IMG/VR virus record: IMGVR_UViG_3300042289_000986
Location: 1-64,000 of that record
Length of the DNA stretch: 64,000 bases
Reading direction: 5' to 3' (one strand)
Positions 30,221 to 50,191 of the stretch are shown piece after piece. The number at the start of each line of letters is the position of its first letter. Position 1 is the first letter of the stretch. The translations under genes and the position numbers were made by a program. The notes beneath the pieces are model-generated. The model was not told the origin of the DNA. It did not search any database and saw nothing but the letters and a program-made list of their open reading frames with translations.

Positions 30221-31561
30221 ATGAAATTCGATACTTTGGCTAAAAAGATTTATTTGGAAGCAAGAGGACCAGATGAACCCGAAAGAGAATTGCCAGAACG
30301 AGCAACCGCTACAGGAGAATTTAACATTGGTGCGGCTGGAGCCAGAAATATTACATTCCTTCCAAAAAAATCATCACCAGAAGAAGTTGCGGTTTCTAGA
30401 GGACGCAGTAGAGAAGTAGGTACTGATTTTAAATTGGATCAAGGTAAAAAAATTACACTTACAGGAGATTTAGATAAAAGAAAATCTATTTTATACGGGG
30501 TTGCTGCTGGTGAAGCCTTTAAAAGATTAAAAGCCCAAGATTTTACACCCAAAACCACACACGAAGCAGAATCCGTCAGAGAATTTATGGAGCGCGGTAT
30601 GGACGAAAAACTCGCAGATGCTCAATATTTAATGGGAAGAGTTTTTAGAAATCTTATCAGTCTTTATGATTTAGATCAAAAAGGAGGTGAAGGTGCTGTA
30701 AAAGCAGAGAAAAAAATAAAAATTTTATCAGATGAAGGAGACGTATTAACCGTCACTACAATTCCTTTATTGGCAAAAGAAACATTAAAATTATTTAAAG
30801 ATGGAATTGCCAAAGATTTAATAGAAAATCATGGCTTATCCAAAGCATTTTTAATCGATCAAAATAATATCTTATCGCCAGTTCCTCCCAGAGGAAATCA
30901 AGAAACGCCTAGTCTTTTAAGTATTCGTTTAGGTTGGAAACGTTTAATAGCAGGATTAATTCAACTCACAGGAACAAAAGGAAAAGAATTTGTTAAATGG
31001 AGTAGAACAACAAGACAAGAACAACCAAAAATCAATCTTCTTGCTTTGGATTATCGTTCAACTCCTACCAATTGGATTATTCATACTATTAAAAGAGTTA
31101 AAGATCCAGAAAAAGGAGCATATCTGCGACAACTTCATAAAACAGAAGGTGATAAACCAAGTCCTCGTTTAAAAACAGATTGGCCAAGTGAAAACGAAGG
31201 AATAAATCTTCTTCCATTAAAATTTGTTGATGGTGTTCCACAATATGGTATTCAATTAACTGAAAAAGAAATGAAACTTTCATCAGTGGCAGAAACTTTA
31301 GAATTAGTTGGTTATGATACTATTTGGGATGTTATATATGCTTGGAATAAAGGCGATGCCACATTCCAAATTCCAAATACAAACAAAACAATTAATTTAA
31401 AAAATTTAAATATTTCTAGATATAGATTATCAGAACCACCAAAGGAAAAACGTAAAACTGTAGAAAAAATTGCAAAGAATGTTGTAAGACCAGAATACAG
31501 ACCGCTTCCAAAAGATTCCGATAATCAATTAGATTTAGACTTTAACCCAGAAAAAAAATGA
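30221..31561 (+). CDS. Hypothetical protein, putative internal head protein
   Basis: MKFDTLAKKIYLE N-terminus; TAAATA upstream. Confidence 0.6.
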   Translation: MKFDTLAKKIYLEARGPDEPERELPERATATGEFNIGAAGARNITFLPKKSSPEEVAVSRGRSREVGTDFKLDQGKKITLTGDLDKRKSILYGVAAGEAFKRLKAQDFTPKTTHEAESVREFMERGMDEKLADAQYLMGRVFRNLISLYDLDQKGGEGAVKAEKKIKILSDEGDVLTVTTIPLLAKETLKLFKDGIAKDLIENHGLSKAFLIDQNNILSPVPPRGNQETPSLLSIRLGWKRLIAGLIQLTGTKGKEFVKWSRTTRQEQPKINLLALDYRSTPTNWIIHTIKRVKDPEKGAYLRQLHKTEGDKPSPRLKTDWPSENEGINLLPLKFVDGVPQYGIQLTEKEMKLSSVAETLELVGYDTIWDVIYAWNKGDATFQIPNTNKTINLKNLNISRYRLSEPPKEKRKTVEKIAKNVVRPEYRPLPKDSDNQLDLDFNPEKK

Positions 31562-31923
31562 AATCAAAAGACCAAATCAAACTAGAATCTCTTTATGAAC
31601 AAGTTGTAAATGAATTGTTTACAGGTATGGGCATATCTGAATTGAAACCAAAATTAGAAGATGCTGGTTATGTTTATGATCAAGAATCCGACACGTTTAA
31701 ATCTCCTGTCAGTAATCAATCTTTGAGTTTTTCTGATGCAGTTAAAGAATATGAAGAAAAAGGACAATCTGATGAAGAATCTTCAGAACAATCCTCAGAA
31801 GAAGAATTAGATACACCAATTGAAAAGAAAGCAGATGCAATGCTTTCTCAAGGCGCACCACAAGATGGTATGTCAGATCAACAAGTCAAAGTGATTGAAG
31901 ATCTTTTAGACGAAAAAAATTAA
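31558..31923 (+). CDS. Acidic hypothetical protein
   Basis: MKSKDQIKLESLY N-terminus. Confidence 0.6.
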   Translation: MKSKDQIKLESLYEQVVNELFTGMGISELKPKLEDAGYVYDQESDTFKSPVSNQSLSFSDAVKEYEEKGQSDEESSEQSSEEELDTPIEKKADAMLSQGAPQDGMSDQQVKVIEDLLDEKN

Positions 31924-33882: not shown

Positions 33883-34278
33883 ATGAGAACCCATGACGAA
33901 AAATTGATGGAAGGTGCATATCGTAAAATATATGTAAAAGAAAATGTTTCCAGTATACAAGAACCCATTCTTATTTGGCTTACTAAAAGAATCGGAAGCA
34001 ATGCACAACAAGACAATGAATATCGTCCTTTGCTTTTGAAACTTTTAAAAAAATTAATTAGTAAAGAACAAAAAAGAAAAGTCAGCAAAAATTCTTCTCC
34101 TATTGCTGCTGGTATTCCTGTAAAAATTTCTACAGCCCAAGTTCCAATCACACCTGATTCATTTCCAAAAGCATCACTTAAAAAAGAATCGTTTGAAAAT
34201 CTTCTCAAAGAATCTTTGACACCTGATGAACTTGAAGAACTTTTTACGGATAGTGAAGAGTCAGAGTCGGTTCAATAA
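33883..34278 (+). CDS. Hypothetical protein
   Basis: MRTHDEKLMEGAY N-terminus; TAAATA upstream. Confidence 0.55.
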   Translation: MRTHDEKLMEGAYRKIYVKENVSSIQEPILIWLTKRIGSNAQQDNEYRPLLLKLLKKLISKEQKRKVSKNSSPIAAGIPVKISTAQVPITPDSFPKASLKKESFENLLKESLTPDELEELFTDSEESESVQ

Positions 34279-34642
34279 AAGCAGCTTCTGTTACATGAAG
34301 TTTGGGATAAGCAATTTCTGCAATCGATTTGGGATCATATAAAGGATAGCGAGCCACAACAAAACTTCCTTGAGCAGGATCATAAACAAAGGTCATGTTC
34401 TTGTAAACAAATACCAGAATGGCATGACCCAACAATCTTCCATTAAACTGTATACCAATCGTACGTGTCCAAATATAAGGTTCCAATCTTTCTTGAGCAT
34501 CCAATAACATCTTCATATGTAAAGTATAAACCAAGCAACCATTCTCCAACTCATGAAATATCTTTTTTTCTCCTGCTTTGTAGTTGGGTAAGAATAGAAA
34601 GAAACAAGCCACCAATATTATTACTGGAAGCAATCTTAACAT
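34244..34642 (-). CDS. Signal/anchor-containing protein, possible Cys-His-Asp hydrolase fold
   Basis: Hydrophobic N-terminus; NGC, GHA and YDP motifs. Confidence 0.5.
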   Translation of the reverse strand: MLRLLPVIILVACFFLFLPNYKAGEKKIFHELENGCLVYTLHMKMLLDAQERLEPYIWTRTIGIQFNGRLLGHAILVFVYKNMTFVYDPAQGSFVVARYPLYDPKSIAEIAYPKLHVTEAAFIEPTLTLHYP

Positions 34643-34654
34643 AAATATATTTAT

Positions 34655-35875
34655 ATGCGATCAAAGGATCAAATCATTTTGGAAGAAATTTATACAAGAG
34701 AAATCTTGAATGAAAAAAGAAAAGAAAGACTTCTTCCCATGTTTAACAAGATTATTCAAAAGTTTGCCGATCTTCCTGAAGGGTTTCCTCTTCAATACCA
34801 AGAGTCCTCGATAAAATCTGAATTTGGTGCAAAAGATAAAACCGAAGAAGAATACAAGAAAGAAATTAAAGAATACAACATTGAAGAACTAACTTTTGAT
34901 TTTCAACAGTTAATAAAAAATGTTTCTGTTTTGGCAAAAAAAGAAAACTTGGTCATGATAATTTTGAAAAAAGTGGTTTTAGATATGGAAACAATGTGGA
35001 AAGACATGGAAAGATATGGGGTGGTTTTTGATAGACAATTGGATGAAGATGGACAAGAAATGACAAGTTCCAAAGAAGAGTATGAAGACTATTTAAAAAG
35101 AATTCCTCGTTCAATTTCAACGTCCATACAACACTGGCTTTCTTTACCCATACCAAAACTGCAAACTTATTTAAAAAATGTCAGTCCCAATGAACAATGG
35201 TATGTGGTGGCTCGAACTGTGGATGAAATGGAAAACGAATGGAAACAAAGTGCAGGTCAATGGATTGATGTCACCGATGATATGAAGAAAGGAAACATCA
35301 AAGAGTTTATAAATTTTGGAAACATGGGTTGGTTTACTTTAATGCGTCCCTATTGTGAACAAGAAGGAAAAGCAATGGGTCACTGTGGTAACAAAGGAGC
35401 ATTTGCACACACCGATACTGTTTTGTCATTACGAGAAATGAAAAAACAAAAAGATGGAATTCTTTTGGCCAAACCTTATTTGACTTTTATTTTACAGTCA
35501 GGAGAATTTTTAGGAGAAATGAAAGGTAGAGGAAACCAAAAACCACAAGAAAAATACCACCCTTATATTCTGAGTCTTTTGACTCACAAAGAAAATGGCA
35601 AGTATCTAATCAAAGACATCGAAGGAGGTGGTTATCTTCCAGAAAAAAACTTTGATATTGAAGATTTTTCCTATGAAAACCTTGTCAAGCTGACCAACGA
35701 AAGACCATATATGGTGGCAAAAAGAATAAGAAATTATGAATCATTTTATTTAACAGATAAAAAAGAAGTTCCAGAAAAAATGATCAAGGCAGTGATGGCA
35801 AGTAAAAATAAAGATAAGGTTTTATTGGACGTTCCCCAAGCCCAAAGAGAAAAAATATTTCCTCCGACTACCTAA
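34655..35875 (+). CDS. Hypothetical protein with PcfJ-like motif
   Basis: EGKAMGHCG and EMKGRGNQKP; MRSKDQIILEEIY N-terminus. Confidence 0.6.
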   Translation: MRSKDQIILEEIYTREILNEKRKERLLPMFNKIIQKFADLPEGFPLQYQESSIKSEFGAKDKTEEEYKKEIKEYNIEELTFDFQQLIKNVSVLAKKENLVMIILKKVVLDMETMWKDMERYGVVFDRQLDEDGQEMTSSKEEYEDYLKRIPRSISTSIQHWLSLPIPKLQTYLKNVSPNEQWYVVARTVDEMENEWKQSAGQWIDVTDDMKKGNIKEFINFGNMGWFTLMRPYCEQEGKAMGHCGNKGAFAHTDTVLSLREMKKQKDGILLAKPYLTFILQSGEFLGEMKGRGNQKPQEKYHPYILSLLTHKENGKYLIKDIEGGGYLPEKNFDIEDFSYENLVKLTNERPYMVAKRIRNYESFYLTDKKEVPEKMIKAVMASKNKDKVLLDVPQAQREKIFPPTT

Positions 35876-36104: not shown

Positions 36105-36188
36105 TGGTAGCGAAGGAGGGACTCGAACCCTCACGGCTTGCGCCGACAGATTTTAAGTCTGTTGTGTCTGCCATTTCACCACTTCGCC
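36105..36188 (-). tRNA. tRNA-Leu (TAA)
   Basis: GGCGAAG acceptor, ACAGA-CTTAAAA-TCTGT anticodon arm, long variable arm, GGTTCGAGTCC, encoded CCA. Confidence 0.95.
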
Positions 36189-36248
36189 ATATTTAAAGAG
36201 CTTACGTTAGTTTTGTTCATTCGTCAAGGGTAAATATTTTATAATAAC

Positions 36249-36683
36249 ATGTTTTTATTCCCTTTTATTAGATCTTTTTACAGAACGCCTAACGTAAAAA
36301 CGACTACCACCAGACAAACTACTACAGTTACAAATGGTGTTACTACTTCTACCAAAACCGATAGTTTTGTAACTACCCTTCGTAGTCGTTATGGTTATAA
36401 TTCTGTTTCTACTTCAACCAGAGTTTCTACAACCACATCAAAGGGAAATGTTTGGCAAGCACCCCCAACGACAAACAATCCTGAACCACCTAGAACTGCA
36501 TCGGTGGCAACAAATTTAACACAAAGAACACGCAATTCCGCAATGGCATATGTAGAATCTGCTCCACCTAGAACAACTACTACAACCACAACCACAACCA
36601 CTACTATAAAAAAGCGTCCTGTTCAACCTCGTTGGCGTTTAGTTCCTGTTGGATGGGGTAGATGGGTGTGGAGAAGATATTAA
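36249..36683 (+). CDS. Thr-rich basic protein (paralog 1)
   Basis: TAAATA upstream; paralogous to the next gene. Confidence 0.7.
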   Translation: MFLFPFIRSFYRTPNVKTTTTRQTTTVTNGVTTSTKTDSFVTTLRSRYGYNSVSTSTRVSTTTSKGNVWQAPPTTNNPEPPRTASVATNLTQRTRNSAMAYVESAPPRTTTTTTTTTTTIKKRPVQPRWRLVPVGWGRWVWRRY

Positions 36684-36699
36684 AGGATAAATAAATTAT

Positions 36700-37125
36700 A
36701 TGGCAACAATTTTTAATTTTCGTTTTTCTCCCAGAGACAGTTATAAAATGACCGTCAATAAACCGTCGAAAACCACGACCACTTCTGGAAATAAATTCAC
36801 AACGGGCATTACCACAACAACAAAAGAAACGACCTCGTTTACAACAACTTTACGCCATCGTTTCGGTTACAATGCGGTGACAACAGCAACGACAACAACA
36901 ACGGTTACACAGGCTCCTCCGCTCGTTAACAATGCAGCACCAGTGGCGCCCGGTGCCCCTGCAAACCTCTATCAATTGGAGAATGCATTTGCTCAACCTC
37001 CAGTTCCTCGTACCTCCACAACAGTCAGTACAACAACAACGGTTACCAAGGCAGTCAAACCTCGTTGGCGTTTATTACCCGTCAAACGTGGAAGAAGCAT
37101 TAGTTGGGTTTGGAGACAAGGATAA
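36700..37125 (+). CDS. Thr-rich basic protein (paralog 2)
   Basis: Shares TTLRxRxGYN and PRWRLxPV..WVWR with the previous gene. Confidence 0.7.
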   Translation: MATIFNFRFSPRDSYKMTVNKPSKTTTTSGNKFTTGITTTTKETTSFTTTLRHRFGYNAVTTATTTTTVTQAPPLVNNAAPVAPGAPANLYQLENAFAQPPVPRTSTTVSTTTTVTKAVKPRWRLLPVKRGRSISWVWRQG

Positions 37126-37328
37126 AATAGCCCTCTTTCAAGGCTATTTATACTCAAAAAAGTGCCTAAAAATACCCAAAAAGTGGGTAAAAGTGGGGAA
37201 AAATGGGTCAAAAAACCATAAAAAATATCCATCTTTTTAAAGGTTACTCTGTAGAATAGAAAAAAAAGTCAAAATAACCCAATGCGTTTGACTTTTAATA
37301 AAAAAATGGTATAGTATGAAAAAATACT

Positions 37329-39959: not shown

Positions 39960-40151
39960 GTCAAGGATATTTTTTGATAGAGGGTTATCGTGAAACTTAT
40001 TTTCTTGTTGGAGGGCATTCAAACGAACGTTTTTTTACAGAGATGGACAGAGATGACGACAAGAAAACATGAATCTTATTTTCTTGTCGATTTCGCCCAC
40101 CCTGAAAAAACCTGTTGACCCCTGAATGTACACCTGATATTAATGGTGACG

Positions 40152-40319
40152 ATGAAAACACCAACCACACAAGAAGCCAAAGAGATGATTCTCTGGCTCT
40201 GGAACAAGGACACTCTCATCGATGAGTTTCCTGAAACCGAAATCCGCCGCAAAGAAGTCCGAGCGGCTCTTATTCAATGGGCCAAAAATTCCATTGACAC
40301 CGAAACCACCAGCCACTAA
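40152..40319 (+). CDS. Small hypothetical protein
   Basis: 55-aa ORF directly behind a cassette promoter. Confidence 0.5.
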   Translation: MKTPTTQEAKEMILWLWNKDTLIDEFPETEIRRKEVRAALIQWAKNSIDTETTSH

Positions 40320-40328
40320 AACACCACC

Positions 40329-40496
40329 ATGACAACTAACGAACTCGTCCGTCATATCTTCTTCAAACTCGATGAGGAAGAGAATGGTTACAATGTTCCC
40401 AAGATGCAACGATTCGAAGACGGGATCGTTTGTGTCTTCGGAAAAAAAGTCTTGACCATTTCCGTGTCAGACATTACTGATGCATACAAACAATAA
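40329..40496 (+). CDS. Small hypothetical protein
   Basis: 55-aa ORF with operonic spacing. Confidence 0.45.
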   Translation: MTTNELVRHIFFKLDEEENGYNVPKMQRFEDGIVCVFGKKVLTISVSDITDAYKQ

Positions 40497-40503
40497 ACCC
40501 AAT

Positions 40504-40671
40504 ATGAAAAAACTAAACAAAGAACAAAGGAAGGCTCAACGCCTTCGTCGCAAGTTGGACAACTACATCACCGAGTTGCATAAACTCTACAAGGCACACC
40601 TTGAGGAACTTAATGCTCTCTCCGTCGATCTTTCTCGTTTCGAGAATGGTCATGAACCTCTACCCCGCTAA
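40504..40671 (+). CDS. Small hypothetical protein
   Basis: MKKLNKEQRK ORF. Confidence 0.5.
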   Translation: MKKLNKEQRKAQRLRRKLDNYITELHKLYKAHLEELNALSVDLSRFENGHEPLPR

Positions 40672-40848
40672 TCTTATGCATCAATACAAAGTCCACCTGC
40701 CCCAACGAAACAACTGGGATGAAGACTGTGACATGATGGAGTCTTTCTATCTATCAGGCATCAACAGCAAACCTTACTACGACGAAGAAGACAATCTTCC
40801 TTCGTCGCTCGATGACATTCCGATTAACATAGAAGGAAGCGAAACGGA

Positions 40849-41025
40849 ATGAAGAAGCTCACCCTCGTTCTTTCTTTGTTCTGGGCAACCTTGTTCTGGG
40901 TCTTGCTCGTCTATCTGATCTTCAACTTGATTGGTTGTGCGCCGAAAGAACCTTGGTGGAAGAAACACGGCTACGATCCTAAACAACAAATTGATCTGAC
41001 CTTGGTTCCCGACATCATCCCATAG
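40849..41025 (+). CDS. Small putative lipoprotein
   Basis: MKK plus hydrophobic stretch plus LIGC lipobox-like motif. Confidence 0.5.
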   Translation: MKKLTLVLSLFWATLFWVLLVYLIFNLIGCAPKEPWWKKHGYDPKQQIDLTLVPDIIP

Positions 41026-41043
41026 AATTCCTCTCGCGCAAAC

Positions 41044-41076
41044 AAAGGCCACTGTCGAAAGATGGTGGCCTTTTTT
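41044..41076 (+). terminator. Rho-independent terminator
   Basis: GGCCACTGTC-GAAA-GATGGTGGCC plus T-tract. Confidence 0.85.
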
Positions 41077-41216
41077 GTTTTTACCATGTGGGCCTTGTGG
41101 TCCCTGTGGTCCGGTTAACCCCTTACAAGAAAACATGAATCTTATTTTCTTGTTGAATGCACCCACGGGCAAAAAAAGTTCTTGCCACGGGCGCGGGAAT
41201 TTGTCATGCTCTCCCC

Positions 41217-41387
41217 ATGTTCAAAAGAACCTACACCTACCATTACATCGAGGCTGACAAAAACCATCCTCATCAATTTGAAAAAAAATTTAAAAAAATC
41301 CTTGACACTTTGCTGAATCCTGATTATGTTCGCGCTGTTGAAAAGATTGCAAAGATTTATTCCAAGCAAAATTATCTTTACAACTAA
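41217..41387 (+). CDS. Small hypothetical protein
   Basis: MFKRTYTY ORF behind a cassette promoter. Confidence 0.45.
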   Translation: MFKRTYTYHYIEADKNHPHQFEKKFKKILDTLLNPDYVRAVEKIAKIYSKQNYLYN

Positions 41388-41414
41388 CCACCAACCAACT
41401 AACCTAAAACCACA

Positions 41415-43430
41415 ATGAAACTAAGCACCACCACCAACACCATCGAACGTATCGGAAACGTGTCCAACGAGGCGCAATTCCGTATGAAAACAAGTCAGAA
41501 GGCATTTCAAATCCTCTCTGACCTCTACTCCGACAAACCTCTCGCCATCGTGCGTGAGTTGGGTTGCAACGCCGCTGACAGTATGACTGCTGCTGGCAAA
41601 GCCGACCAACCCTTCCACATTCATCTTCCGAACACCTTGGAACCTTGGCTTGCCATTGAAGATTTCGGGACGGGTATCTCGCATGATGACATCTACGAGA
41701 TTTACACTGTCTATTTTGCTTCGACCAAGACCAACAGCAACAGTCAGATCGGTTGCTTGGGATTGGGTAGCAAGTCTCCTTTCTGCTATACCGATAACTT
41801 CTCCGTGACTTCTACTCACAATGGAGTTCGTCGTATCTACAATGCTTACTTCAACGAGGAAGGCACTCCTGCAATCGCACTCATGTCAACCGAGAATCAT
41901 TCTGGTTCCAATGGTGTGAAGATTCAAATTCCTGTGAAGTCCACAGACTTCCAAGACTTCCTTGTTGCTACGCAAAAAGCCTTCCGCTTCTTCGACGTTA
42001 AGCCAACGATCAGTGGCGGCAAGTTGGATTGGGGCGTGGAAACTCCGTTGTTCAAATCGGACGATTGGGCTTTCTTTGAGAAGATGGCAGACCGCTATCA
42101 TGGTCAATCCTTCGCCATCATGGGTGGCGTGACCTATCCTATCGACACCTATCAAGTGCGCGATGAAGAAGGCGAGTATCAGCAAATGCTTCGCAACGGA
42201 TTGGTCTTGAAGTTCGCTATGGGTGAGTTGGACTTCACTCCTGCAAGGGATGCTCTGTCCTATACGCCTATGACAATCAAGGCAGTTCATGACAAACTTG
42301 CCAAGGTCAAGAAAGAGTTGCCTGTCAAGGTGACTGAAATGATCGACAGCAAAGAGACGTTGCTTGAAGCTATCCGCGCCACGTTGTTCTTCATCGACAA
42401 GTTCTACTTCCTCAACGTCAATCGTATCGGCGTGAAGAAAGATGAAATGAAGATCACTTGGAAAGGTATCGACATTACCGAACCTACTGGCTTTTTCAAA
42501 AAGCTCGCGCCTGACATGGAGTTGTTCAGCAAACGTAGTTGGCATCGTCGCAAGATCAGTGTCAGCACTCAACCACAATTCGGTAGCGACATCGAATGGT
42601 TCCGTAATGACGTTGTTCGTGGTGGCGAGCGTCGAGTTCGTGGATACGTTTCTTCCAGTGGCAAGACTGTCATGGTTTTCAATCAGACCGATTATGACAA
42701 TCTTCTCAAAAACAAGTTCACATCCGATATGTTCAAAGCGGTATCTTCGTTGCCTTCTCCTACTGCTCAACGCAAAGTGCGTAGCAATGGAACAGTTGTG
42801 CAAAAAGCCAAGGAAGATATTACTACCTATACCTTCGGGGAAATGCACAAAGAGAAGTGGGAGAGTGAAGTGATCGAACCTTCCGACACTCTGCCTAAAT
42901 ACTACTTTGTCAAAGAGACTGATGGTTGGGGATTGAAGCTCAAGCTCAACGGCATCCGAGTTCTTTCTACCAAGGGAGAGTTGGCAAACATCCTCGCCGC
43001 TTTCGGTATCTCGCGTGATGAAGTCTGCATGGTTTCGTCGCGTGAGGAAAAGAAAGTTCTCCAACGTGGAGGATGCGAGAATCTTGCAACGTGGTGGAAC
43101 GCTAACATCAAAGTCGAGTTCGATGCCGATGAGTTGAAAACTCTTGAAGAATACGAGTTCTATCACATGGACAAGATCACAAGTCATAAGAAGTTCAAAG
43201 ACCTTGACGATTCCAATTCCATCAAAGTCGCGCTCAACACGCTCAAGACTTTGAAAGCAAAGTATGTCAAACTCAAAGACATCACTCATTCCTTGGAAAA
43301 CTTCAAGAGTGGAAAGAAAGTCAAGTTCCCTCTTAATGAAGCGGAAGCGATTGTGTTTGACTTCATCCGTAATTGCGGTCACTACGATTGCGACAAGTAT
43401 CTGGTGCTTGCCAAGGCACTTGAAAAATAA
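41415..43430 (+). CDS. rIIA: RIIA-like protein (N-terminal GHKL ATPase)
   Basis: LYSDKPLAIVRELGCNAADS, DFGTG and GCLGLGSKSPFCYTD motifs; followed by rIIB. Confidence 0.9.
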   Translation: MKLSTTTNTIERIGNVSNEAQFRMKTSQKAFQILSDLYSDKPLAIVRELGCNAADSMTAAGKADQPFHIHLPNTLEPWLAIEDFGTGISHDDIYEIYTVYFASTKTNSNSQIGCLGLGSKSPFCYTDNFSVTSTHNGVRRIYNAYFNEEGTPAIALMSTENHSGSNGVKIQIPVKSTDFQDFLVATQKAFRFFDVKPTISGGKLDWGVETPLFKSDDWAFFEKMADRYHGQSFAIMGGVTYPIDTYQVRDEEGEYQQMLRNGLVLKFAMGELDFTPARDALSYTPMTIKAVHDKLAKVKKELPVKVTEMIDSKETLLEAIRATLFFIDKFYFLNVNRIGVKKDEMKITWKGIDITEPTGFFKKLAPDMELFSKRSWHRRKISVSTQPQFGSDIEWFRNDVVRGGERRVRGYVSSSGKTVMVFNQTDYDNLLKNKFTSDMFKAVSSLPSPTAQRKVRSNGTVVQKAKEDITTYTFGEMHKEKWESEVIEPSDTLPKYYFVKETDGWGLKLKLNGIRVLSTKGELANILAAFGISRDEVCMVSSREEKKVLQRGGCENLATWWNANIKVEFDADELKTLEEYEFYHMDKITSHKKFKDLDDSNSIKVALNTLKTLKAKYVKLKDITHSLENFKSGKKVKFPLNEAEAIVFDFIRNCGHYDCDKYLVLAKALEK

Positions 43431-43482
43431 TTGAAAAATTCCATTGACAAATAACAACAAACCATATAACCTAATAAACGAT

Positions 43483-44469
43483 ATGAATAAGCATACCACA
43501 GCAGTTACTATCACAGGCAACGGCAAGATCGCCGCTGTCATCGACGGCACGGCATACTCCGTGGAAACCGATCACCCGAACCATGCCAAGGCACTTGACG
43601 CTATTCGCAATAGCGATTGGGAAACCTTCTTGGATTGTGTTGACCTCTCTCGCAAGGTTCGTGACTACGTTCACAACACCAACGTCGAGATTAAGGATGG
43701 CATGATCGTGTTCGATGGTGAATCTGTTCACAACACCTTGACCAAACGAGTCATTAGCTTCATGCAACAAGACTTGCCTTTCAAGCCTATGCTCAACTTC
43801 CTCTGCAATCTCATGGACAATCCTTCCAAGAGAGCGGTTGACGAGTTGTATGACTTCCTTGAAGCAGGTGAGTTGCCCATCACTGAAGATGGTCACTTCC
43901 TCGCCTTCAAGAATGTCAAAGCAGACTACAAGGACATTTACTCTGGCAAGTTTGACAATGCGGTTGGTGCTATCTGTGAAATGAAGCGCAACCAAGTTGA
44001 CGAGGACAAAGATCGCACTTGCAGTTACGGATTGCACTTCTGCTCTATTGCGTATCTCCCTCACTTCCGAGATTGTAATGGTGGTAAGACCATGATCGTG
44101 AAGATCAATCCCAAGGACGTTGTTGCTATTCCCGCCGATTACAACAACACCAAAGGACGCACTTGCCGCTACGAAGTTGTTGGTGAATACACCGAAAACT
44201 GGCGCGAGAAGTTGGGTCGCAACGAAAGCGGTTGGGACGCTCCACTCTACTCATCCGATGGTGGGGAGTATGAGGACGAGGATTCCGATTGGAATGATTG
44301 CTGCGATGATGGCAATTGCTACTGCAACGAAGATGATCAATCCTATGATGATCACTTGGATGAAGTCAGCAACGGATACTCTCCCGATGTTTATGGAGTC
44401 AAACCCACTGGTCAAAAGTTCTACAACCTCCGTGGGGATGATGGGAAGTTCCAAAAGAAGAATGTGTAG
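43483..44469 (+). CDS. rIIB: RIIB-like protein
   Basis: ITEDGHFLAFK, RTCSYGLHFC and VKINPKDVVAIPADYNNTKGRTCRYEVV motifs. Confidence 0.9.
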   Translation: MNKHTTAVTITGNGKIAAVIDGTAYSVETDHPNHAKALDAIRNSDWETFLDCVDLSRKVRDYVHNTNVEIKDGMIVFDGESVHNTLTKRVISFMQQDLPFKPMLNFLCNLMDNPSKRAVDELYDFLEAGELPITEDGHFLAFKNVKADYKDIYSGKFDNAVGAICEMKRNQVDEDKDRTCSYGLHFCSIAYLPHFRDCNGGKTMIVKINPKDVVAIPADYNNTKGRTCRYEVVGEYTENWREKLGRNESGWDAPLYSSDGGEYEDEDSDWNDCCDDGNCYCNEDDQSYDDHLDEVSNGYSPDVYGVKPTGQKFYNLRGDDGKFQKKNV

Positions 44470-44579
44470 GGTTAGTGTTATTGCATTGTGGTGTGGTTGC
44501 TGAAAGGCAAAGGGGGAGGGAAGTCTGGGCTTCTCTCCCCCAACACCATGAATCATATTTTCTTGTTAAGTATTTTCAT

Positions 44580-44652
<73 letters not shown>

Positions 44653-44657
44653 CATCA

Positions 44658-44729
44658 GGGATGGTAGCTCAAAGGTAGAGCAGTGCCCTTTTAAGGCATT
44701 GGTTGTGAGTTCGATCCTCACCCATCCCA
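44658..44729 (+). tRNA. tRNA-Lys (TTT)
   Basis: Cloverleaf; GTGCC-CTTTTAA-GGCAT. Confidence 0.93.
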
Positions 44730-44732
44730 TTC

Positions 44733-44757
44733 AACCCGTCAATCGACGGGTTTTTTT
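44733..44757 (+). terminator. Rho-independent terminator
   Basis: ACCCGTC/GACGGGT plus T-tract. Confidence 0.85.
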
Positions 44758-45135
44758 GTATCTTCCCGAAGTCAATTTCGGGAACATCACGAAACAAATT
44801 TCAGGATCATCGAGCCGAACAAGAAAAGATGAATCATATTTTCTTGTAGAGTGTTGTGGTATGGTCAAATATTTATCGAAAACGTTTGACACTTTGCCAG
44901 CTTTATGCTTTAATCTTTCTTGTAATGAAGAAATTCATGCTACCAATAAGTGTTGTGTTGGAATATTTCGTCAGTTTGACGGAACGATTCCTCCACAGGA
45001 AACAAAAGCCATCTTTCATGGCTCTTAGCGTGGTGGAGTTCACCCAAGAAAATTGGCTTGACGGAGTTGTTCGTCAAGGTAGAATTCTTGATCACCTCTA
45101 CTACTACAACCAAAACAACTAAACAGAAAGAGAAG

Positions 45136-45321
45136 ATGAAACATATACCAACATTGTCGATTGTATTCTTTAAAGATACAGGTCTTTACGGATACGAGTA
45201 TGACGATATCAACGGCCTTACTCAAACTGAGTATGGTTACCTCTCAGTGGATGCTGCCCTTGGCGATGCATTCAAACGCCTCAAGACTTTCACAGTCTTG
45301 GAGGATGTCGAAACCAAGTAA
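45136..45321 (+). CDS. Small hypothetical protein
   Basis: ORF in a plus-strand operon. Confidence 0.5.
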   Translation: MKHIPTLSIVFFKDTGLYGYEYDDINGLTQTEYGYLSVDAALGDAFKRLKTFTVLEDVETK

Positions 45322-45333
45322 GAATAAATCCAA

Positions 45334-45633
45334 ATGAAAAAGAATGGTCTTCTTACTCAAGAAGAACGTCAGGATTATGGGAAAGGGTTTGGAAGCAAAC
45401 CCAATTTCCTCGAAGCTCTTTTCGCTCTTCAGCAAACGTATCCAGAGTGTTACATCGAGGCATGGACACCTGAAGACTACGAAGCCAAGGCTGGTCGTGA
45501 AATCACAATCCGTGAGGCTATGATTGTTTCCAATTACCTCTACAACTATGTGGATGCTAACAAAGGAACGACTTGGAATAAGATCGAAAAATATGTGAAG
45601 AAAACTCTTGACGATCATAGCGACCTTGAATAG
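45334..45633 (+). CDS. Hypothetical protein
   Basis: ORF in a plus-strand operon. Confidence 0.6.
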   Translation: MKKNGLLTQEERQDYGKGFGSKPNFLEALFALQQTYPECYIEAWTPEDYEAKAGREITIREAMIVSNYLYNYVDANKGTTWNKIEKYVKKTLDDHSDLE

Positions 45634-45645
45634 GCTGCAATCGTT

Positions 45646-45858
45646 ATGAACCGCTACAACATCAAAGTCACGATCAGTCTGAACGTCCTCGCGGAAAATT
45701 CGAACGATGTTCTTGACTGTGTGAATGAACTCGACTACAACTTCCTCGAAACAACTGGTAAATGTTTTCTCGAACGCTTCGAGATGGCAGATACTGAAAT
45801 CATGGAAGTTCAACCACTAACCAAAAAAGAAATGAAGGAGATTAAAAGTTATGCCTAA
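45646..45858 (+). CDS. Small acidic hypothetical protein
   Basis: ORF in a plus-strand operon. Confidence 0.55.
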   Translation: MNRYNIKVTISLNVLAENSNDVLDCVNELDYNFLETTGKCFLERFEMADTEIMEVQPLTKKEMKEIKSYA

Positions 45859-46369
45859 CTATTGCACAAACGTTCTCATGCTGAATGAGGATAGTAACGA
45901 TTCAATCTGGGATGTCCTCAGAGATTACATTTCCAATGGAAGATTGGACTTCGAGTTGATTCGTCCGATGCCTGATGAATTGCGCGGAACCACATCTCCA
46001 ACACCAAAAGACACTGATCCTGCTACCAAGGAAGCACTCATACAAAAGTATGGCGCGGATAACTGGTGGGATTGGTGTGTGCAAAACTGGGGAACCAAAT
46101 GGAACTGCGACATGGATGCGGAGAAAAATCAAAGCAAACATTGCATGACAATGGATACTGCATGGAGTCCTCCGATTCCGATTGTGGCGCAACTCTCAAA
46201 GCTAACTGGTCGGGAGTTTCGCTTGACCTATATTGAAGAAGGGGTGGACTTCTGCGGAGAATACTTCAGCTATCCAAACTGGTTGAAGAATCACGACCAT
46301 GAACACTCTCCGATCAGTAGCGCACCCAAGAAACTTCAAAAGGAACTCGTTAGTGAATGGACATGGTAA
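45851..46369 (+). CDS. YubB/DUF1281 ferredoxin-like (Api92-like) protein
   Basis: MPNYCTN, WWDWCVQNWGTKWN and DTAWSPP motifs. Confidence 0.85.
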   Translation: MPNYCTNVLMLNEDSNDSIWDVLRDYISNGRLDFELIRPMPDELRGTTSPTPKDTDPATKEALIQKYGADNWWDWCVQNWGTKWNCDMDAEKNQSKHCMTMDTAWSPPIPIVAQLSKLTGREFRLTYIEEGVDFCGEYFSYPNWLKNHDHEHSPISSAPKKLQKELVSEWTW

Positions 46370-46373
46370 CCTT

Positions 46374-46607
46374 ATGAAAAAAACAATTCAAGAAAAAATA
46401 AACGAAGCCTACGAAGAACTTAGAGAAATTGCGCTCGAACTTGCTGATGACTTAGAAATCTCCCAAGAAATTGATGGCAACTATGCTTGCTTCATCGACA
46501 AGGAAATCTATACAACATTCCAGAAGATGAATGAGAAGATCAACAAGCTCCACGACAAACAGAAAGAGCAAGATGCCAAACAATTGAAATTCGCACTCAA
46601 GCGATGA
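46374..46607 (+). CDS. Hypothetical protein
   Basis: Operonic ORF. Confidence 0.5.
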   Translation: MKKTIQEKINEAYEELREIALELADDLEISQEIDGNYACFIDKEIYTTFQKMNEKINKLHDKQKEQDAKQLKFALKR

Positions 46608-46813
46608 AAAAGAAAAAAGATCAAAAGACTCCTACCGATATTTTAAATTGGTGCGAGAGTCAAGAAGAAAAAACTAAAAAAACAATTGATCATCTATTGG
46701 ATCATGAAGATTGGCAGGATGAAAAAACAAAAAAAGCCTTGACGATTGCTTCACAAATCCTTAAAAGTATAGATGAACTGAAACAAGCAACCTTAGATAT
46801 CATCATTAAATGA
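46604..46813 (+). CDS. Hypothetical protein
   Basis: ATGA overlap. Confidence 0.5.
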   Translation: MKKKKDQKTPTDILNWCESQEEKTKKTIDHLLDHEDWQDEKTKKALTIASQILKSIDELKQATLDIIIK

Positions 46814-46829
46814 AACTTATTTTCTTGTA

Positions 46830-47048
46830 ATGAAAACCATGACTAAAAACCTCACACGAAAACTTTTTAATCTGCCGACAAAAAATGTTCGTAGGCAGAT
46901 GAAGAAGGCAACCAAAAAATATCTTGTGGTCAACGATCACAATCCACATGATGTTTTTGAAATCGAAGCAACCAATCCTAACACCGCTGCTCATGCTGCC
47001 CTCACGCATCTTGGCTGGTGGTTGGCCGAGGATCAATACATCCGCTAA
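46830..47048 (+). CDS. Hypothetical protein
   Basis: Starts immediately after a repeat half-site. Confidence 0.5.
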   Translation: MKTMTKNLTRKLFNLPTKNVRRQMKKATKKYLVVNDHNPHDVFEIEATNPNTAAHAALTHLGWWLAEDQYIR

Positions 47049-47049
47049 C

Positions 47050-47253
47050 ATGATTACAAAAGACAAACGTGGTAACAATGTTGCTGTTGGTAATGTTGTG
47101 AAACTTGGCAGGAAAAAAGATCGTTATCGCATTATCAAAATCATTCAAGTGGATAGTGGGGTTGAGGGAGAAACTTATCCTATTTTTGAATTGCTTTCAC
47201 TCGAACCTCAAACTATCTTCCGTGGCGAACACCAAATCGAACTATCATACTAA
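47050..47253 (+). CDS. Small SH3/KOW-like protein
   Basis: KDKRGNNVAVGNVV, similar to 50300-50533. Confidence 0.45.
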   Translation: MITKDKRGNNVAVGNVVKLGRKKDRYRIIKIIQVDSGVEGETYPIFELLSLEPQTIFRGEHQIELSY

Positions 47254-47254
47254 C

Positions 47255-47422
47255 ATGAAAAAGAACCAACTGATGAACCGAGTGATTGACTATGCTCTCT
47301 GCTACCTCAATTCCAATTGGGATGATTGGGTCGAAGAAGACTTGGGATTGTCAAATGAACAATTTCAAAAAATTATCCAACAGTTTCAAAAAAGTCTTGA
47401 CGAGAAACCAACCAGCGTCTAA
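47255..47422 (+). CDS. Small hypothetical protein
   Basis: Operonic ORF. Confidence 0.45.
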   Translation: MKKNQLMNRVIDYALCYLNSNWDDWVEEDLGLSNEQFQKIIQQFQKSLDEKPTSV

Positions 47423-47434
47423 CCTTATTACGTC

Positions 47435-47740
47435 ATGAAAAAACCAAACACCACAAAACTCAAAGCTATGGCTCGCAATATCAAGCAAAGGATCATTGCT
47501 CGCCAAATCAAACACCTCAATCGTAGTGCCATGTCTGGTGATTACGAACTCCTCAAGATGCATAGCAACGACCTCACGGATGTTCTGTTCATCTGTGGAC
47601 AAATCCTCAATGGCAATTACATAATTGCTCTTGATACTTGGGGTGACTTGGACACTCAAATCCGAGACATCTTTTCCATTCGCTTTATCAATATCCTTGA
47701 AAAAGCGGCTGACTACGAATACCATTTCAACGCACTCTAA
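47435..47740 (+). CDS. Hypothetical protein
   Basis: Operonic ORF. Confidence 0.55.
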   Translation: MKKPNTTKLKAMARNIKQRIIARQIKHLNRSAMSGDYELLKMHSNDLTDVLFICGQILNGNYIIALDTWGDLDTQIRDIFSIRFINILEKAADYEYHFNAL

Positions 47741-47811
47741 CAATATGCTTGTAATCTTTCTTGCAATCATTATACTCTGTTACTACGAAAAGCACGGATC
47801 ACTTTAATATT

Positions 47812-48288
47812 ATGGGATATACACACTACTGGAACTTCGATCCTAACAAGATCGAGAACACCGAAACGCTTCGCAAGAAGTTTAAACGAGCCAGCAAGCA
47901 AATTAAATCATTTGCAAACTGGTTGCCTAACAAAGGGATCAAGATCTGCGGTGGACTTGGAGATGGTAAACCTATCTTCAACGAAACCGAAATCTGGTTC
48001 AATGGAGATGGATCAGAGAAACTCGATCATGAAACGTTTAACCTTCATTGGTCGCGTCCTACTACTCATGGTAGACACAGCGACTTCTGCAAGACCGCCC
48101 GTAAACCTTACGATCTCTTGGTCTGCTTTGCTCTTCTCACATTTGCTGAGATCTTCCCAGAAGCATTCGAGTTCTCCTCCGATGGAGACATGGAAGATAC
48201 TGAGTGGCAAGAAGGCGTAGAGTATTATGAATTGTATACAGGTAAGACCGCCAAGATTCCTCAAAGCATGATGAAACAAGCAGCTTAA
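47812..48288 (+). CDS. Conserved phage protein (MGYTHYW / FCKTARKPYD family)
   Basis: Characteristic motifs. Confidence 0.75.
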   Translation: MGYTHYWNFDPNKIENTETLRKKFKRASKQIKSFANWLPNKGIKICGGLGDGKPIFNETEIWFNGDGSEKLDHETFNLHWSRPTTHGRHSDFCKTARKPYDLLVCFALLTFAEIFPEAFEFSSDGDMEDTEWQEGVEYYELYTGKTAKIPQSMMKQAA

Positions 48289-48295
48289 CAACTCT

Positions 48296-48368
48296 GGGGT
48301 GGTAGCTCAATGGTTAGAGCAGTCGGCTCATAATCGATTGGTTGGGGGTTCGAATCCCTCCCGCCCCA
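48296..48368 (+). tRNA. tRNA with CAT anticodon (likely Ile2/lysidine type, or elongator Met)
   Basis: GTCGG-CTCATAA-TCGAT; D arm resembles bacterial Ile2; paired 1:72. Confidence 0.9.
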
Positions 48369-48376
48369 CAAATATT

Positions 48377-48598
48377 ATGACAAAAAAAGAAAAACAAATG
48401 GAGAAGTACATCAAGGATCTTTGCCGCGATGCAGATGTTGAATACGATCCTGAATTCGGATCTCACATGGACGATGAAAAACTTAACGAACTACTACGAC
48501 AAGATATCCAAAAACAATTGGACTACATGGTTCAAGAGGGTTTTTGTGAACAAGTGGGAGATAAATACATCTGTAGGGAAAACCCTACTGATCTTTAG
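48377..48598 (+). CDS. Hypothetical protein
   Basis: ORF after the tRNA. Confidence 0.5.
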   Translation: MTKKEKQMEKYIKDLCRDADVEYDPEFGSHMDDEKLNELLRQDIQKQLDYMVQEGFCEQVGDKYICRENPTDL

Positions 48599-48956
48599 TA
48601 TTATTATCTTTTCGGCTGTATGTGCAATCATCGTCATTACATATCTGGGGGTCAGTGCAGTGGTGCGCTGGTTGGGTGATGACTGATAGCATTTTCGCCC
48701 GAACACAAATTACGGAATTAAAAAGCAATGAAGTTCAACGCATCTTTATCCTCTCGCCTTAAGGCGTAATCAAAATGCGCCGTGGCGAAAGGTTTTATGA
48801 AAGCAAAACTGAAACAAAACATAACGAGAAGATTGGATCAAGTAGTTCTTCTTCTCAGTAACCCTAACTATGATCCTATCAGGGATGGCTTCTTCCTCCC
48901 ATTCTTCAGGGCATTCTTTCTCAATAAGATTGTTTATAAATAAACTCTTGTTACAA

Positions 48957-48999
48957 TGCAACACTGTGTTAGAATGCAACATGGTGTCGCATACCCGCA
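48957..48999 (+). repeat. 43-bp repeat, copy 1 (TGCAACA-type), followed by purine-pyrimidine alternation
   Basis: One mismatch to 52263-52305. Confidence 0.9.
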
Positions 49000-49046
49000 C
49001 GTAGCGCATACGTGCGCGTAGGCATACGCTATAGAAAAATACAACA

Positions 49047-49448
49047 ATGATATCAACCGCTCTATCAGATCAAATGGTGTTTCAAACCTTTACGATGGTA
49101 AAGGCAAAGAACAACAAGACTTCACCATTCAAAGTTGATGGTTTGATTTGTTTTGGAAAACTCATTCATGAATCCAAGACAGCCAAATACTACAAGTATG
49201 CAAATGGTGTCGTGCAAAAGAAATACAAAGTCAAAGATCAAACAGCACTCAATACCAAGAAAGTAACAGTCAGCAATGATAGGGAAGGAGAGCTTTTGAT
49301 TGAAACCATGCTTAAACCTATGGGAATCAAACGCAGACTCTATCGTGTCCCCAATGATGGACTTCCATACAGCGCAAAAGGCAACTTTACCCGCAATGGA
49401 AACATTCCAAAGCACAGAGCCAAGATCATTGACGTATATTTGCAATGA
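49047..49448 (+). CDS. Basic hypothetical protein
   Basis: ORF; start uncertain. Confidence 0.5.
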   Translation: MISTALSDQMVFQTFTMVKAKNNKTSPFKVDGLICFGKLIHESKTAKYYKYANGVVQKKYKVKDQTALNTKKVTVSNDREGELLIETMLKPMGIKRRLYRVPNDGLPYSAKGNFTRNGNIPKHRAKIIDVYLQ

Positions 49449-49735
49449 AATCCATGAATGAATATCGAAAACATGGAATGAAATCCAATTCTCATTTAAA
49501 GCGGAATTGAGTTTCAAGAAACTTATTTTCTTGTTTGAGGTGCTATTGATGTGAAAGTCGCCTCTCATGAAACTTATTTTCTTGTAAATCCCACTCTCCC
49601 GTAAAAAGTCCTTGTCTGGGTTCATGATTCGGTTATTCTAAGGACGCTTCGGAGGCCCCGTTAAGCCATCGAAAGATGGTTGAGCTACGGAGAAGGGTGA
49701 GTGGGAATAAAACACCACTCACCCTTCAATTTTTA

Positions 49736-49808
49736 GTCCGTGTAGTGAAAAAGGACATCACACAGATCCCCGAAATCTGAATTCCAGCTTCGATTGCTGG
49801 CACGGACA
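49736..49808 (+). tRNA. Atypical tRNA-Arg (CCG)
   Basis: Perfectly paired cloverleaf; anticodon loop CCCCGAA; T-loop TTCGATT. Confidence 0.8.
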
Positions 49809-49813
49809 TTTTT

Positions 49814-49849
49814 AGCCCATCTCTTAAAAGGGATGGGCTTCTTCTTTTT
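49814..49849 (+). terminator. Rho-independent terminator
   Basis: AGCCCATC/GATGGGCT plus T-rich tail. Confidence 0.75.
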
Positions 49850-49981
49850 CCGCAGAAATGTTCGAGGCGGAACGGCTGTGTTCGAGCATCAAAAGAAAAG
49901 GTGAATCATATTTTCTTGTTGTGTTCGAGATTCAGGAAAAAAGTTCTTGTGAACTCGAACCTATCAGGTAATCTCATCAAC

Positions 49982-50047
49982 GGGCTGACTCATCCCCGAA
50001 GGGTGAGAGTTGCAACAGACAAAAATAGAGGAATTAACCTCCAGCCC
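49982..50047 (+). ncRNA. Candidate small structured RNA
   Basis: GGGCTG/CAGCCC closing stem with two internal hairpins, at a predicted TSS. Confidence 0.5.
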
Positions 50048-50065
50048 AAAACTTTCTTTGACAAT

Positions 50066-50187: not shown

Positions 50188-50191
50188 CATC

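What the first reader, a model, noticed from the sequence alone, without database searches (positions are those of the whole stretch)
36249..37125. Pair of Thr-rich cationic proteins with Trp/Arg-rich C-terminal hairpins
Seen: two ~140-aa paralogs, each with only 3 acidic residues. They have a Phe-rich N-terminus, long Thr runs, conserved SFxTTLRxRxGYNxVxTxT, a Pro-rich linker and an ending V.PRWRL.PV..GR..WVWR. Each follows TAAATA. Inference: Thr-lined beta-strands plus an antimicrobial-peptide-like tail suggest a membrane-active (lysis or ejection), fibril-forming or glycosylated virion protein of a family I do not recognise.
Basis: partly seen in the sequence, partly recalled or inferred. 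Interest (0 to 1): 0.6.

Follow-up and report, generated by a model that had tools for sequence, protein, structure and literature searches.

The report
Polycationic Thr-rich late-gene pair, orphan family
Two neighbouring genes of an uncultured 212-kb T4-like phage encode real, conserved, extremely basic, threonine-rich proteins with Trp/Arg-rich ends. They belong to no known family, appear to be switched on late in infection, and are an exchangeable accessory cassette whose function is still only inferred.

Summary
ORF A (36249-36683, 144 aa) and ORF B (36700-37125, 141 aa) are true paralogues, scoring 20 sd above composition-preserving shuffles. Both have pI about 12, 0-3 acidic residues and 27-34% Thr+Ser. 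Both have aromatic/Arg-rich N-termini and a conserved PRWRLxPV..G..W.WR ending.

They are real genes. The pair is syntenic in five phage lineages, indels are in frame, and dN/dS is about 0.16-0.34.

The window is the start of a 211,587-bp distant T4-like phage with gp55, gp20, gp21 and gp23 homologues. TAAATA is this phage's T4-type late-promoter core. It lies 4-20 nt before 49 of 266 ORFs, against 2.4 at random positions, and those ORFs include tail sheath, portal and tail fibres. A and B are therefore probably late genes.

No Pfam, PHROG, PDB-fold or T4 internal-protein relationship was found. An exhaustive HMMER search of 1.84 billion proteins found only this clade.

The pair behaves as a sharply bounded exchangeable cassette. 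Against relative L004 the flanks are 96-100% identical, while the cassette is about 63% identical with dS about 1.2. A relative whose rIIA is 86% identical lacks the pair at this locus.

My best guess, at low confidence, is a packaged polyanion-binding (DNA-associated) accessory virion protein pair. A membrane-active role remains open. Expression could not be tested.

The parts
36231..36236 (+). TAAATA, the T4-type late-promoter core, 12 nt before the ATG of gene A. It sits within the conserved CGTCAAGrGTAAATATTTTATA.
   Evidence: The motif is conserved in all five lineages.
36249..36683 (+). Gene A: 144 aa, pI 11.9, net charge +18, 26% Thr.
   Evidence: Orthologues occur in L004, L007-L012, L013 and L014.
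36573..36605 (+). Run of 11 Thr codons in A (residues 109-119). The tract varies in length and sequence between orthologues.
36627..36680 (+). C-terminal Trp/Arg-rich beta-hairpin of A (PRWRLVPVGWGRWVWRRY). This is the best-predicted part of the model.
   Evidence: E129-135 and E138-143, pLDDT 72-83; near invariant.
36688..36693 (+). TAAATA late-promoter core 6 nt before the ATG of gene B. It sits within the conserved AAGGATAAATAaATTATATG.
36700..37125 (+). Gene B: 141 aa, pI 11.7, net charge +15, 23% Thr.
36910..37011 (+). Pro/Ala-rich linear motif of B, QAPPLVNNAAPVAPGAPxNLYQLxxxFxQPPVPR. The first 17 residues are invariant in five lineages although synonymous sites are saturated.
37060..37122 (+). 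C-terminal Trp/Arg-rich beta-hairpin of B (PRWRLLPVKRGRSISWVWRQG).
   Evidence: (E123-130 and E133-140, pLDDT 84-87).
37125..37149 (+). Weak hairpin just after the stop of B. It may be a transcript end, but it is not significant.
   Evidence: -8.3 kcal/mol, z -1.06. It was not called by the terminator scan.
36105..36188 (-). tRNA-Leu(UAA) immediately upstream on the opposite strand. It marks the left boundary of the variable cassette.
37288..37315 (+). Sigma-70-like promoter (TTGACT-16-TATAGT with TG) for the next gene at 37329. It marks the right flank, where an early-type block begins.
   Evidence: It is conserved in the relatives.

Best explanation
A and B are an ancient tandem duplicate pair of late-transcribed, polycationic accessory proteins of a distant T4-like phage. 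They have almost no acidic residues and are probably beta-rich or partly disordered.

Proposed mechanism (inferred, not shown): each gene is read from its own gp55-type late promoter. The proteins have no export signal and stay in the cytoplasm. Their charge of +13 to +19 draws them to polyanions.

I think they are most likely taken into the prohead and stay with the packaged DNA as internal, possibly ejected, virion proteins. That would be the same job as the T4 internal proteins, done by an unrelated protein.

Under this reading:
- The invariant Pro-rich motif of B and the Trp/Arg hairpins would be docking sites on a conserved partner or on nucleic acid.
- The near absence of Glu would spare them from the Glu-specific S77 prohead protease.
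- Cassette exchange between otherwise near-identical phages, and loss in some relatives, would mark the pair as a host-adaptation or arms-race accessory, not a core part.
For: Shown:
- Real, constrained genes kept as a pair in five lineages.
- pI about 12, with 0-3 acidic residues against 13-21 basic ones.
- TAAATA precedes 49 of 266 ORFs at -20 to -4, against 2.4 +/- 1.5 at random positions. Those ORFs include tail sheath, portal and tail fibres.
- The genome has a gp55 homologue, an S77 prohead protease, a gp23 capsid protein and an acidic scaffold-like protein with net charge -13 and 16 [LI]xE motifs.
- No sigma-70-type promoter was called for A or B, whereas the next gene has one.
- Against L004 the flanks have dS 0.05-0.16 while A and B have dS 1.2-1.3 and dN/dS 0.28. 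The break points fall at the ATG of A and the stop of B.
- L032, with rIIA 86% identical, lacks the pair at the syntenic locus.
- 17 residues of B are invariant despite saturated dS.

Against: - No virion proteomics, expression or localisation data exist.
- There is no homology to T4 IPII or IPIII (hhalign probability 0.1%).
- There is no shared cleavable capsid-targeting sequence. The N-termini are the least conserved part.
- The proteins are Arg/Trp/Thr-rich, whereas T4 IPs are Lys-rich with 11-25 acidic residues and pI 8.9-9.5.
- Strictly conserved Trp next to Arg is more typical of membrane-interface or carbohydrate binding than of duplex-DNA binding.
- The genes lie about 150 kb from the head module.
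- The late-promoter assignment rests on a motif, not on mapped transcripts.
Confidence: 0.3

Rival explanations
1. Envelope-active late proteins. After holin and endolysin action, the aromatic/Arg-rich N-termini and the C-terminal Trp/Arg beta-hairpin bind LPS or anionic lipids and destabilise the outer membrane. This would be a disruptin-like lysis accessory of beta type. Alternatively they act on the membrane during ejection.
For: - Late-promoter motif.
- Extreme cationicity with conserved W/R.
- Both termini resemble Trp/Arg antimicrobial peptides. This is a resemblance from general knowledge, not a test.
- The phiKT gp28 disruptin shows that a cytoplasmically made cationic peptide can replace spanins (10.1101/515445).
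- The only lysozyme domain found sits in a 504-aa frame that looks gp5-like, and Amidase_2 and SLT searches were blank. The lysis set is therefore unidentified.
- A neighbouring late gene, 34244-34642, encodes a membrane-anchored protein.
Against: - The proteins are 141-144 aa and predicted beta. The disruptin is a 56-aa amphipathic helix.
- The strands are Thr-rich on both faces, without an alternating hydrophobic face.
- The matches to pore-state gasdermin and MAC hairpins are at background level, Z 7.7 or below and Foldseek E 0.16 or above.
- The pair is absent at the syntenic locus of a close relative, which is odd for a needed lysis step.
- No known lysis gene lies next to it.
Confidence: 0.2
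2. External virion accessory protein. This could be a decoration, whisker or adhesin, or a fibril-forming beta protein. It would stick the particle to anionic polysaccharide on the host surface, with Thr-rich sheets and Trp contacting sugars.
For: - Late-promoter motif.
- The only other Thr-rich proteins of the genome are the collagen-like tail fibres, at 13-21% Thr.
- Allele exchange and presence/absence are typical of host-recognition modules.
- The pair lies at the end of a late block that holds large RCC1, laminin-G and VWA proteins.
Against: - No similarity to any fibre, decoration or Ig-like family.
- A search of the phage's own genome with A found only A and B.
- No oligomer signal. The A+B complex job gave no answer.
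- A net charge of +13 to +19 with no acidic residues is unusual for exposed virion proteins.
Confidence: 0.15
3. Non-virion late cytoplasmic protein that binds RNA or DNA. Possible roles include an arginine-rich nucleic-acid chaperone, a condensate former, a regulator of late mRNAs, or an inhibitor of a host defence that senses nucleic acid.
For: - Arg-rich, low-complexity, partly disordered composition. The model shows pLDDT below 50 for A residues 68-104 and for B residues 77-82 and 89-97.
- No export signal.
- Accessory, fast-exchanging distribution as in anti-defence genes.
Against: - No known RNA- or DNA-binding domain.
- Anti-defence genes of T4-like phages are mostly early, whereas these carry only the late motif.
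Confidence: 0.2
4. Not functional genes: chance ORFs in low-complexity DNA.
For: Low-complexity composition. Antisense ORFs are also open.
Against: - dN/dS is 0.16-0.34 with dS above 1.
- Indels are in frame and motifs are invariant in five lineages.
- A conserved promoter-like motif stands before each gene.
Confidence: 0.02

Closest known systems
T4 internal head proteins IPI, IPII, IPIII
   Same: - Small basic proteins of a T4-type phage, made late.
- ipII and ipIII are adjacent genes.
- The class is known to be highly diverse between related phages (PMC3012670).
- The genes lie away from the head module and, in T4, near tRNA genes.
   Different: - No sequence relationship (hhalign probability 0.1%).
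- No MKTYQEFIAE-type cleavable targeting sequence.
- T4 IPs are Lys-rich with 11-25 acidic residues and pI 8.9-9.5. A and B are Arg/Thr/Trp-rich with 0-3 acidic residues and pI about 12.
- Packaging of A and B is untested.
Disruptin gp28 of coliphage phiKT
   Same: - Late, cytoplasmically made, strongly cationic orphan protein without a membrane-targeting signal.
- Character like an antimicrobial peptide (10.1101/515445).
   Different: - gp28 is 56 aa, has charge +7, is predicted to be an amphipathic helix and lies in the lysis cassette.
- A and B are 141-144 aa, have charge +13 to +19, are predicted beta, come as a pair, and are not next to recognised lysis genes.
Trp/Arg-rich antimicrobial peptides (lactoferricin core, tritrpticin, indolicidin, designed RW peptides). 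Resemblance recalled from general knowledge.
   Same: Short stretches of alternating W and R, as in GRWVWRR and PRWRL. The predicted hairpin would put Trp on one face.
   Different: - Here the stretch is the last 18-21 residues of a 140-aa protein.
- There are no disulfides.
- Activity is untested, and there is no homology.
Small basic DNA-condensing virion proteins (Microviridae protein J, baculovirus P6.9, adenovirus VII/mu). Analogy from general knowledge.
   Same: Arg/Ser/Thr-rich and nearly free of acidic residues, with Pro-rich spacers and an aromatic C-terminal end.
   Different: - Different virus groups and sizes.
- No homology.
- As far as I know, no such protein has been described in a tailed phage head.

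Membership tests
T4 internal proteins (IPI/IPII/IPIII) | Detectable sequence or profile similarity to IPII or IPIII | tested here: not met
   hhalign of the 11-sequence A/B profile against T4 IPIII and IPII gave probability 0.1-0.15% over 5 aligned columns.
T4 internal proteins (IPI/IPII/IPIII) | Shared N-terminal capsid-targeting sequence, cleaved after Glu by the prohead protease | tested here: not met
   T4 IPs start MKTYQEFIAE or MKTFKEF. A and B start with a variable aromatic/Arg stretch. Seven of the eight orthologues tallied have 0-1 acidic residues, and five have none.
T4 internal proteins (IPI/IPII/IPIII) | Present inside the head and ejected with the DNA | not testable with these tools
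   This needs virion proteomics of a cultured relative.
Disruptin (phiKT gp28 type) | Small (under about 80 aa) cationic peptide with a predicted amphipathic helix | tested here: not met
   A and B are cationic. However, they are 141-144 aa and predicted all-beta apart from two short helical turns in B.
Disruptin (phiKT gp28 type) | Complements a spanin defect and disrupts the outer membrane | not testable with these tools
   This needs a lysis complementation assay.
Spanins (two-component or unimolecular) | N-terminal transmembrane domain (i-spanin), or lipobox Cys (o-spanin or u-spanin) | tested here: not met
   There is no Cys in any orthologue, and no hydrophobic segment. GRAVY is -0.1 to -0.7.
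Beta-barrel membrane proteins and beta pore-forming proteins | Fold match above background, with strands of alternating hydrophobic residues | tested here: not met
   The best matches are pore-state gasdermin, RCD-1 and C8 hairpins at Z 6.1-7.7 and rmsd 7-11 A. The tool states this is the usual background. Foldseek E-values are 0.16 or above. The strands are Thr/Ser-rich on both faces.
Any Pfam-A or PHROG family | HMM match | tested here: not met
   No families were found at E 0.01 or below.
T4-type late genes (gp55-dependent) | (T)ATAAATA-type -10 element just upstream, with a gp55 homologue in the genome | tested here: met
   GTAAATAT stands before A and ATAAATAA before B. The motif is about 20-fold enriched before ORFs and precedes sheath, portal and fibre genes. 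A gp55 homologue is present at E 3e-9. Transcript starts were not mapped.

The most novel reading that the evidence does not exclude
A and B found a new class of phage protein: protamine-like, acid-free, Thr/Arg-rich beta-hairpin polycations. They would be packaged in a tailed-phage head or released at lysis, with Trp/Arg 'zipper' ends gripping DNA or the host envelope. They would be traded between phages as an allelic cassette, which would make them a functional counterpart of the T4 internal proteins or of disruptins, built on an entirely different scaffold.
Probability: 0.2. Interest if true: 0.65.

Novelty: categorically new. Interest (0 to 1): 0.42.

Why it matters
If the pair is packaged, it would show that distant T4-like phages solved the internal-protein problem with an unrelated, Glu-free polycation. 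It would also add a second example of an exchangeable cargo locus. If it is membrane-active, it would be a beta-type counterpart of the only known disruptin, and a natural source of Trp/Arg hairpin peptides. Either way it is a clean case of a clade-restricted orphan family with strong purifying selection, an invariant Pro-rich linear motif and cassette-like exchange. As it stands it remains an orphan of unknown function in an uncultured phage, so the practical weight is modest.

Tried and rejected
- Pfam and PHROG scans of A, B and eight neighbours: nothing.
- blastn of 34-40 kb against 50,697 phage records: only the tRNA matched.
- ESM Atlas search: no usable feature hit, and structural rows all had TM below 0.5.
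- AlphaFold2 models have modest confidence, pLDDT 58 and 67.
- Foldseek against BFVD and PDB, and VIA-align against 48,161 chains: only background matches to long-hairpin proteins.
- Complex prediction for A+B: no answer (score 0.06, mark 0.32). This counts neither for nor against binding.
No expression or read-level test was done, and read laying was not used.
- hhalign against T4 IPII and IPIII: nothing.
- JGI metagenome scan: only the L004 lineage again.
- GTDB genome scan: no relative, so no host clue.
- Literature search for the sample code GROS21: irrelevant hits only.
- P0006, a 754-aa Cys-rich repeat protein, matched only through its poly-Thr tract. I rejected it as a compositional false positive.
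- The terminator after B is weak and not significant.
- A spanin, holin or outer-membrane-protein reading was rejected because there is no transmembrane segment, Cys or signal peptide.
- A diversity-generating mechanism was considered for the divergence. I rejected it because synonymous sites are as diverged as non-synonymous ones over both whole genes.

Full report
**1. The observation**

ORF A (36249-36683, 144 aa) and ORF B (36700-37125, 141 aa) are present as described.
- They are paralogues beyond composition. BLASTP with compositional adjustment gives 45% identity and E 6e-10.
- The local alignment score is 246, against 59 +/- 9 for 2000 shuffles of B (z = 20).
- Each has 3 acidic residues against 18-21 Lys+Arg, pI 11.7-11.9, 23-26% Thr and no Cys.
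- Orthologues have 0-1 acidic residues and pI 12.0.
- The Phe-rich start, the run of 11 Thr in A, the SFxTTLRxRxGYNxV block, the Pro-rich middle and the PRWRLxPV..G..W.WR ending are all there.
- TAAATA lies at 36231-36236 before A and at 36688-36693 before B.

**2. The genes are real**

The pair occurs, in the same order and with the same upstream motifs, in five lineages:
- the window's phage;
- IMG/VR contig 3300031787_000171 (L004);
- a set of ENA lake-type metagenome scaffolds of up to 175 kb (L007-L012);
- a JGI contig (L013);
- a Logan contig (L014).

A orthologues group with A and B orthologues with B. The duplication is therefore older than the clade.

Indels are in frame. dN/dS is 0.16-0.34 with dS above 1. 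In B, the 17 residues QAPPLVNNAAPVAPGAP are invariant although synonymous sites in that segment are saturated. The antisense Val-rich ORFs are by-products of the ACN codons.

**3. What genome this is**

The window is bases 1-64000 of a 211,587-bp IMG/VR virus record with terminal repeats. The genome is 32% G+C. It encodes:
- a gp20-type portal, about 30% identical to those of T4-like cyanophages;
- a gp23 capsid protein (307 bits);
- an S77 (gp21-type) prohead protease (98.7 bits);
- an acidic scaffold-like protein;
- a contractile sheath and collagen-like fibres;
- rIIA and rIIB;
- a homologue of the T4 late sigma factor gp55 (E 3e-9);
- about 21 tRNAs.

It is a distant T4-like phage of an unknown host.

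**4. TAAATA is the late-promoter core**

By established knowledge, the T4 late promoter is a lone -10 element, TATAAATA, read by gp55.
- Here TAAATA lies inside -20 to -4 of the ATG at 49 of 266 ORFs. Random positions give 2.4 +/- 1.5.
- The motif is mostly preceded by A or G.
- The genes that carry it include the sheath, portal and three fibre genes. Nearly every gene of the 9-37 kb block also carries it.
- The gap between motif and ATG is only 5-14 nt. The late mRNAs would therefore be leaderless or nearly so. This is an inference, since no transcript was mapped.
- No sigma-70-type promoter was called for A or B. The next gene, at 37329, has a good one at 37288-37315, conserved in the relatives.

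A and B are thus the last genes of a late block, each with its own late promoter.

**5. No known family**

- Pfam and PHROGs give nothing.
- The word-indexed search of 5.8 billion proteins found only three close clusters.
- An exhaustive HMMER profile search of 1.84 billion representatives has no length window, so it would also see fusions and fragments. It found the B cluster, one further A lineage and one poly-Thr false positive.
- Scans of JGI metagenomes and of 185,579 prokaryotic species genomes added nothing new.

**6. Structure**

AlphaFold2 on the 9- and 11-sequence alignments gives the same topology for A (pLDDT 58) and B (pLDDT 67).
- The model has four strands of 14-15 residues and a C-terminal hairpin of two shorter strands (6-8 residues), arranged up and down.
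- The Pro-rich middle is predicted as unstructured.
- The C-terminal Trp/Arg hairpin is the most confident part, at pLDDT 72-87.
- Fold searches return only background. These are pore-state gasdermin, RCD-1 and complement hairpins (Z 7.7 or below, rmsd 7-11 A), levivirus coats and barrel fragments.
- The strands carry Thr/Ser on both faces, so there is neither a hydrophobic core nor a lipid-facing side.

The proteins probably fold only on a partner, on a polyanion or by self-association.

**7. Population behaviour**

Against L004 the flanking genes are 96-100% identical in DNA, with dS 0.05-0.16. A and B are 63-64% identical, with dS 1.2-1.3 and dN/dS 0.28.
- Identity falls from 100% to about 50% at the ATG of A and recovers at the stop of B.
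- High synonymous divergence with ordinary dN/dS means allele replacement by recombination, not accelerated protein evolution.
- The window's alleles are outliers to all others, at 57-68% amino-acid identity. Its flanks are 98-99% identical to L004.

A more distant relative, L032, has rIIA at 86%, the 73-aa gene at 88% and the 132-aa gene at 61% identity. It lacks A, B and both neighbours (the 406-aa and 212-aa genes) and has a methyltransferase and other genes instead.

The pair is therefore an accessory cassette in a plastic region, not a core component.

**8. Mechanism**

Shown: late-type promoter motifs, extreme positive charge, no export or membrane signals, conserved Trp/Arg ends, an invariant Pro-rich motif in B, and cassette exchange and loss.

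Inferred: the proteins meet polyanions in the cytoplasm. I rank four readings:
- Packaged, DNA-associated internal or ejected accessory proteins, doing the work of T4 internal proteins: 0.3.
- Envelope-active late proteins, like a disruptin but of beta type: 0.2.
- Non-virion nucleic-acid binders: 0.2.
- External adhesin or decoration proteins: 0.15.

The scaffold is acidic, the S77 protease is Glu-specific by established knowledge of T4 gp21, and the Glu-free cargo would escape it. It also fits the known diversity of T-even internal proteins (PMC3012670). ipII and ipIII are likewise adjacent genes in T4.

Against it:
- A and B share no homology or targeting sequence with T4 IPs.
- They are Arg/Trp-rich, not Lys-rich.
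- Conserved Trp-Arg stretches are classic membrane-interface binders.

The disruptin precedent (10.1101/515445) keeps the lysis reading alive. No free-standing endolysin was recognised.

**9. What could not be done**

- The A+B complex job gave no answer.
- No alternative genetic code was needed.

**10. Verdict**

This is a confirmed, real pair of orphan proteins with unusual composition, probably expressed late, and accessory and exchangeable. It belongs to no known family. The function is open, with a low-confidence lean to packaged polyanion-binding proteins. Interest is moderate.

Noticed in passing
window 9000-37200 and genome-wide (list): About 50 ORFs carry TAAATA only 5-14 nt before the ATG. 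This suggests that this T4-like phage makes leaderless or near-leaderless late mRNAs. The capsid gene instead has a classic AGGAGA Shine-Dalgarno.
   Followed up: partly
window 37165-37260: A non-coding stretch conserved in four lineages has repeated AAAAGTGGG / AAAATGGG units. It lies between gene B and the sigma-70-like promoter at 37288-37315. A terminator-like hairpin for the minus strand lies at 37189-37173.
   Followed up: no
window 34244-34642 (-): A late-motif gene encodes a 132-aa protein with a hydrophobic N-terminal anchor. It has a weak language-model lead to transglutaminase-like/DUF553 cysteine-peptidase folds. It has 40 or more relatives in metagenomes, far more than A and B. 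It could be an exported wall-active enzyme.
   Followed up: partly
window 1577-4744 (+): A 1055-aa protein made almost wholly of RCC1 repeats (WD40_RLD 1194 bits). This is unusual in a phage. It lies next to large laminin-G-like (9025-12546) and VWA-containing (16410-21851, 1813 aa) late proteins.
   Followed up: no
window 31558-31923 and 35700-35775: Further mosaic spots against L004. The 121-aa gene is only 67% identical in protein, with dN/dS 0.72. The 3' end of the 406-aa gene carries a diverged or indel segment. The surrounding genes are 94-99% identical.
   Followed up: no
window 40000-56000: This block has clearly higher G+C (40-49%, against about 30% elsewhere). It holds rIIA/rIIB, five tRNAs and many small plus-strand ORFs, and looks like an early region of different composition.
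   Followed up: no
L021:1196-1653 (genome 65196-65653, outside the window): ARAGORN calls a tmRNA-like gene with tag ADEEMLLAA, next to a cluster of 15 tRNAs including tRNA-Thr(UGU), Pro and Ser. This was not checked with Rfam.
   Followed up: no
genome 190052-190261 (L026:33-242): A 69-aa Lys-rich protein of net charge +15 has its own TAAATA. It lies between the prohead protease and the scaffold-like gene. It is a more conventional candidate for an internal head protein of this phage.
   Followed up: no
genome 123960-124307 (L031): The only Phage_lysozyme domain found lies inside a 504-aa frame that looks like a gp5 baseplate hub. Amidase_2 and SLT searches were blank. The endolysin, holin and spanin set of this phage is unrecognised.
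   Followed up: partly
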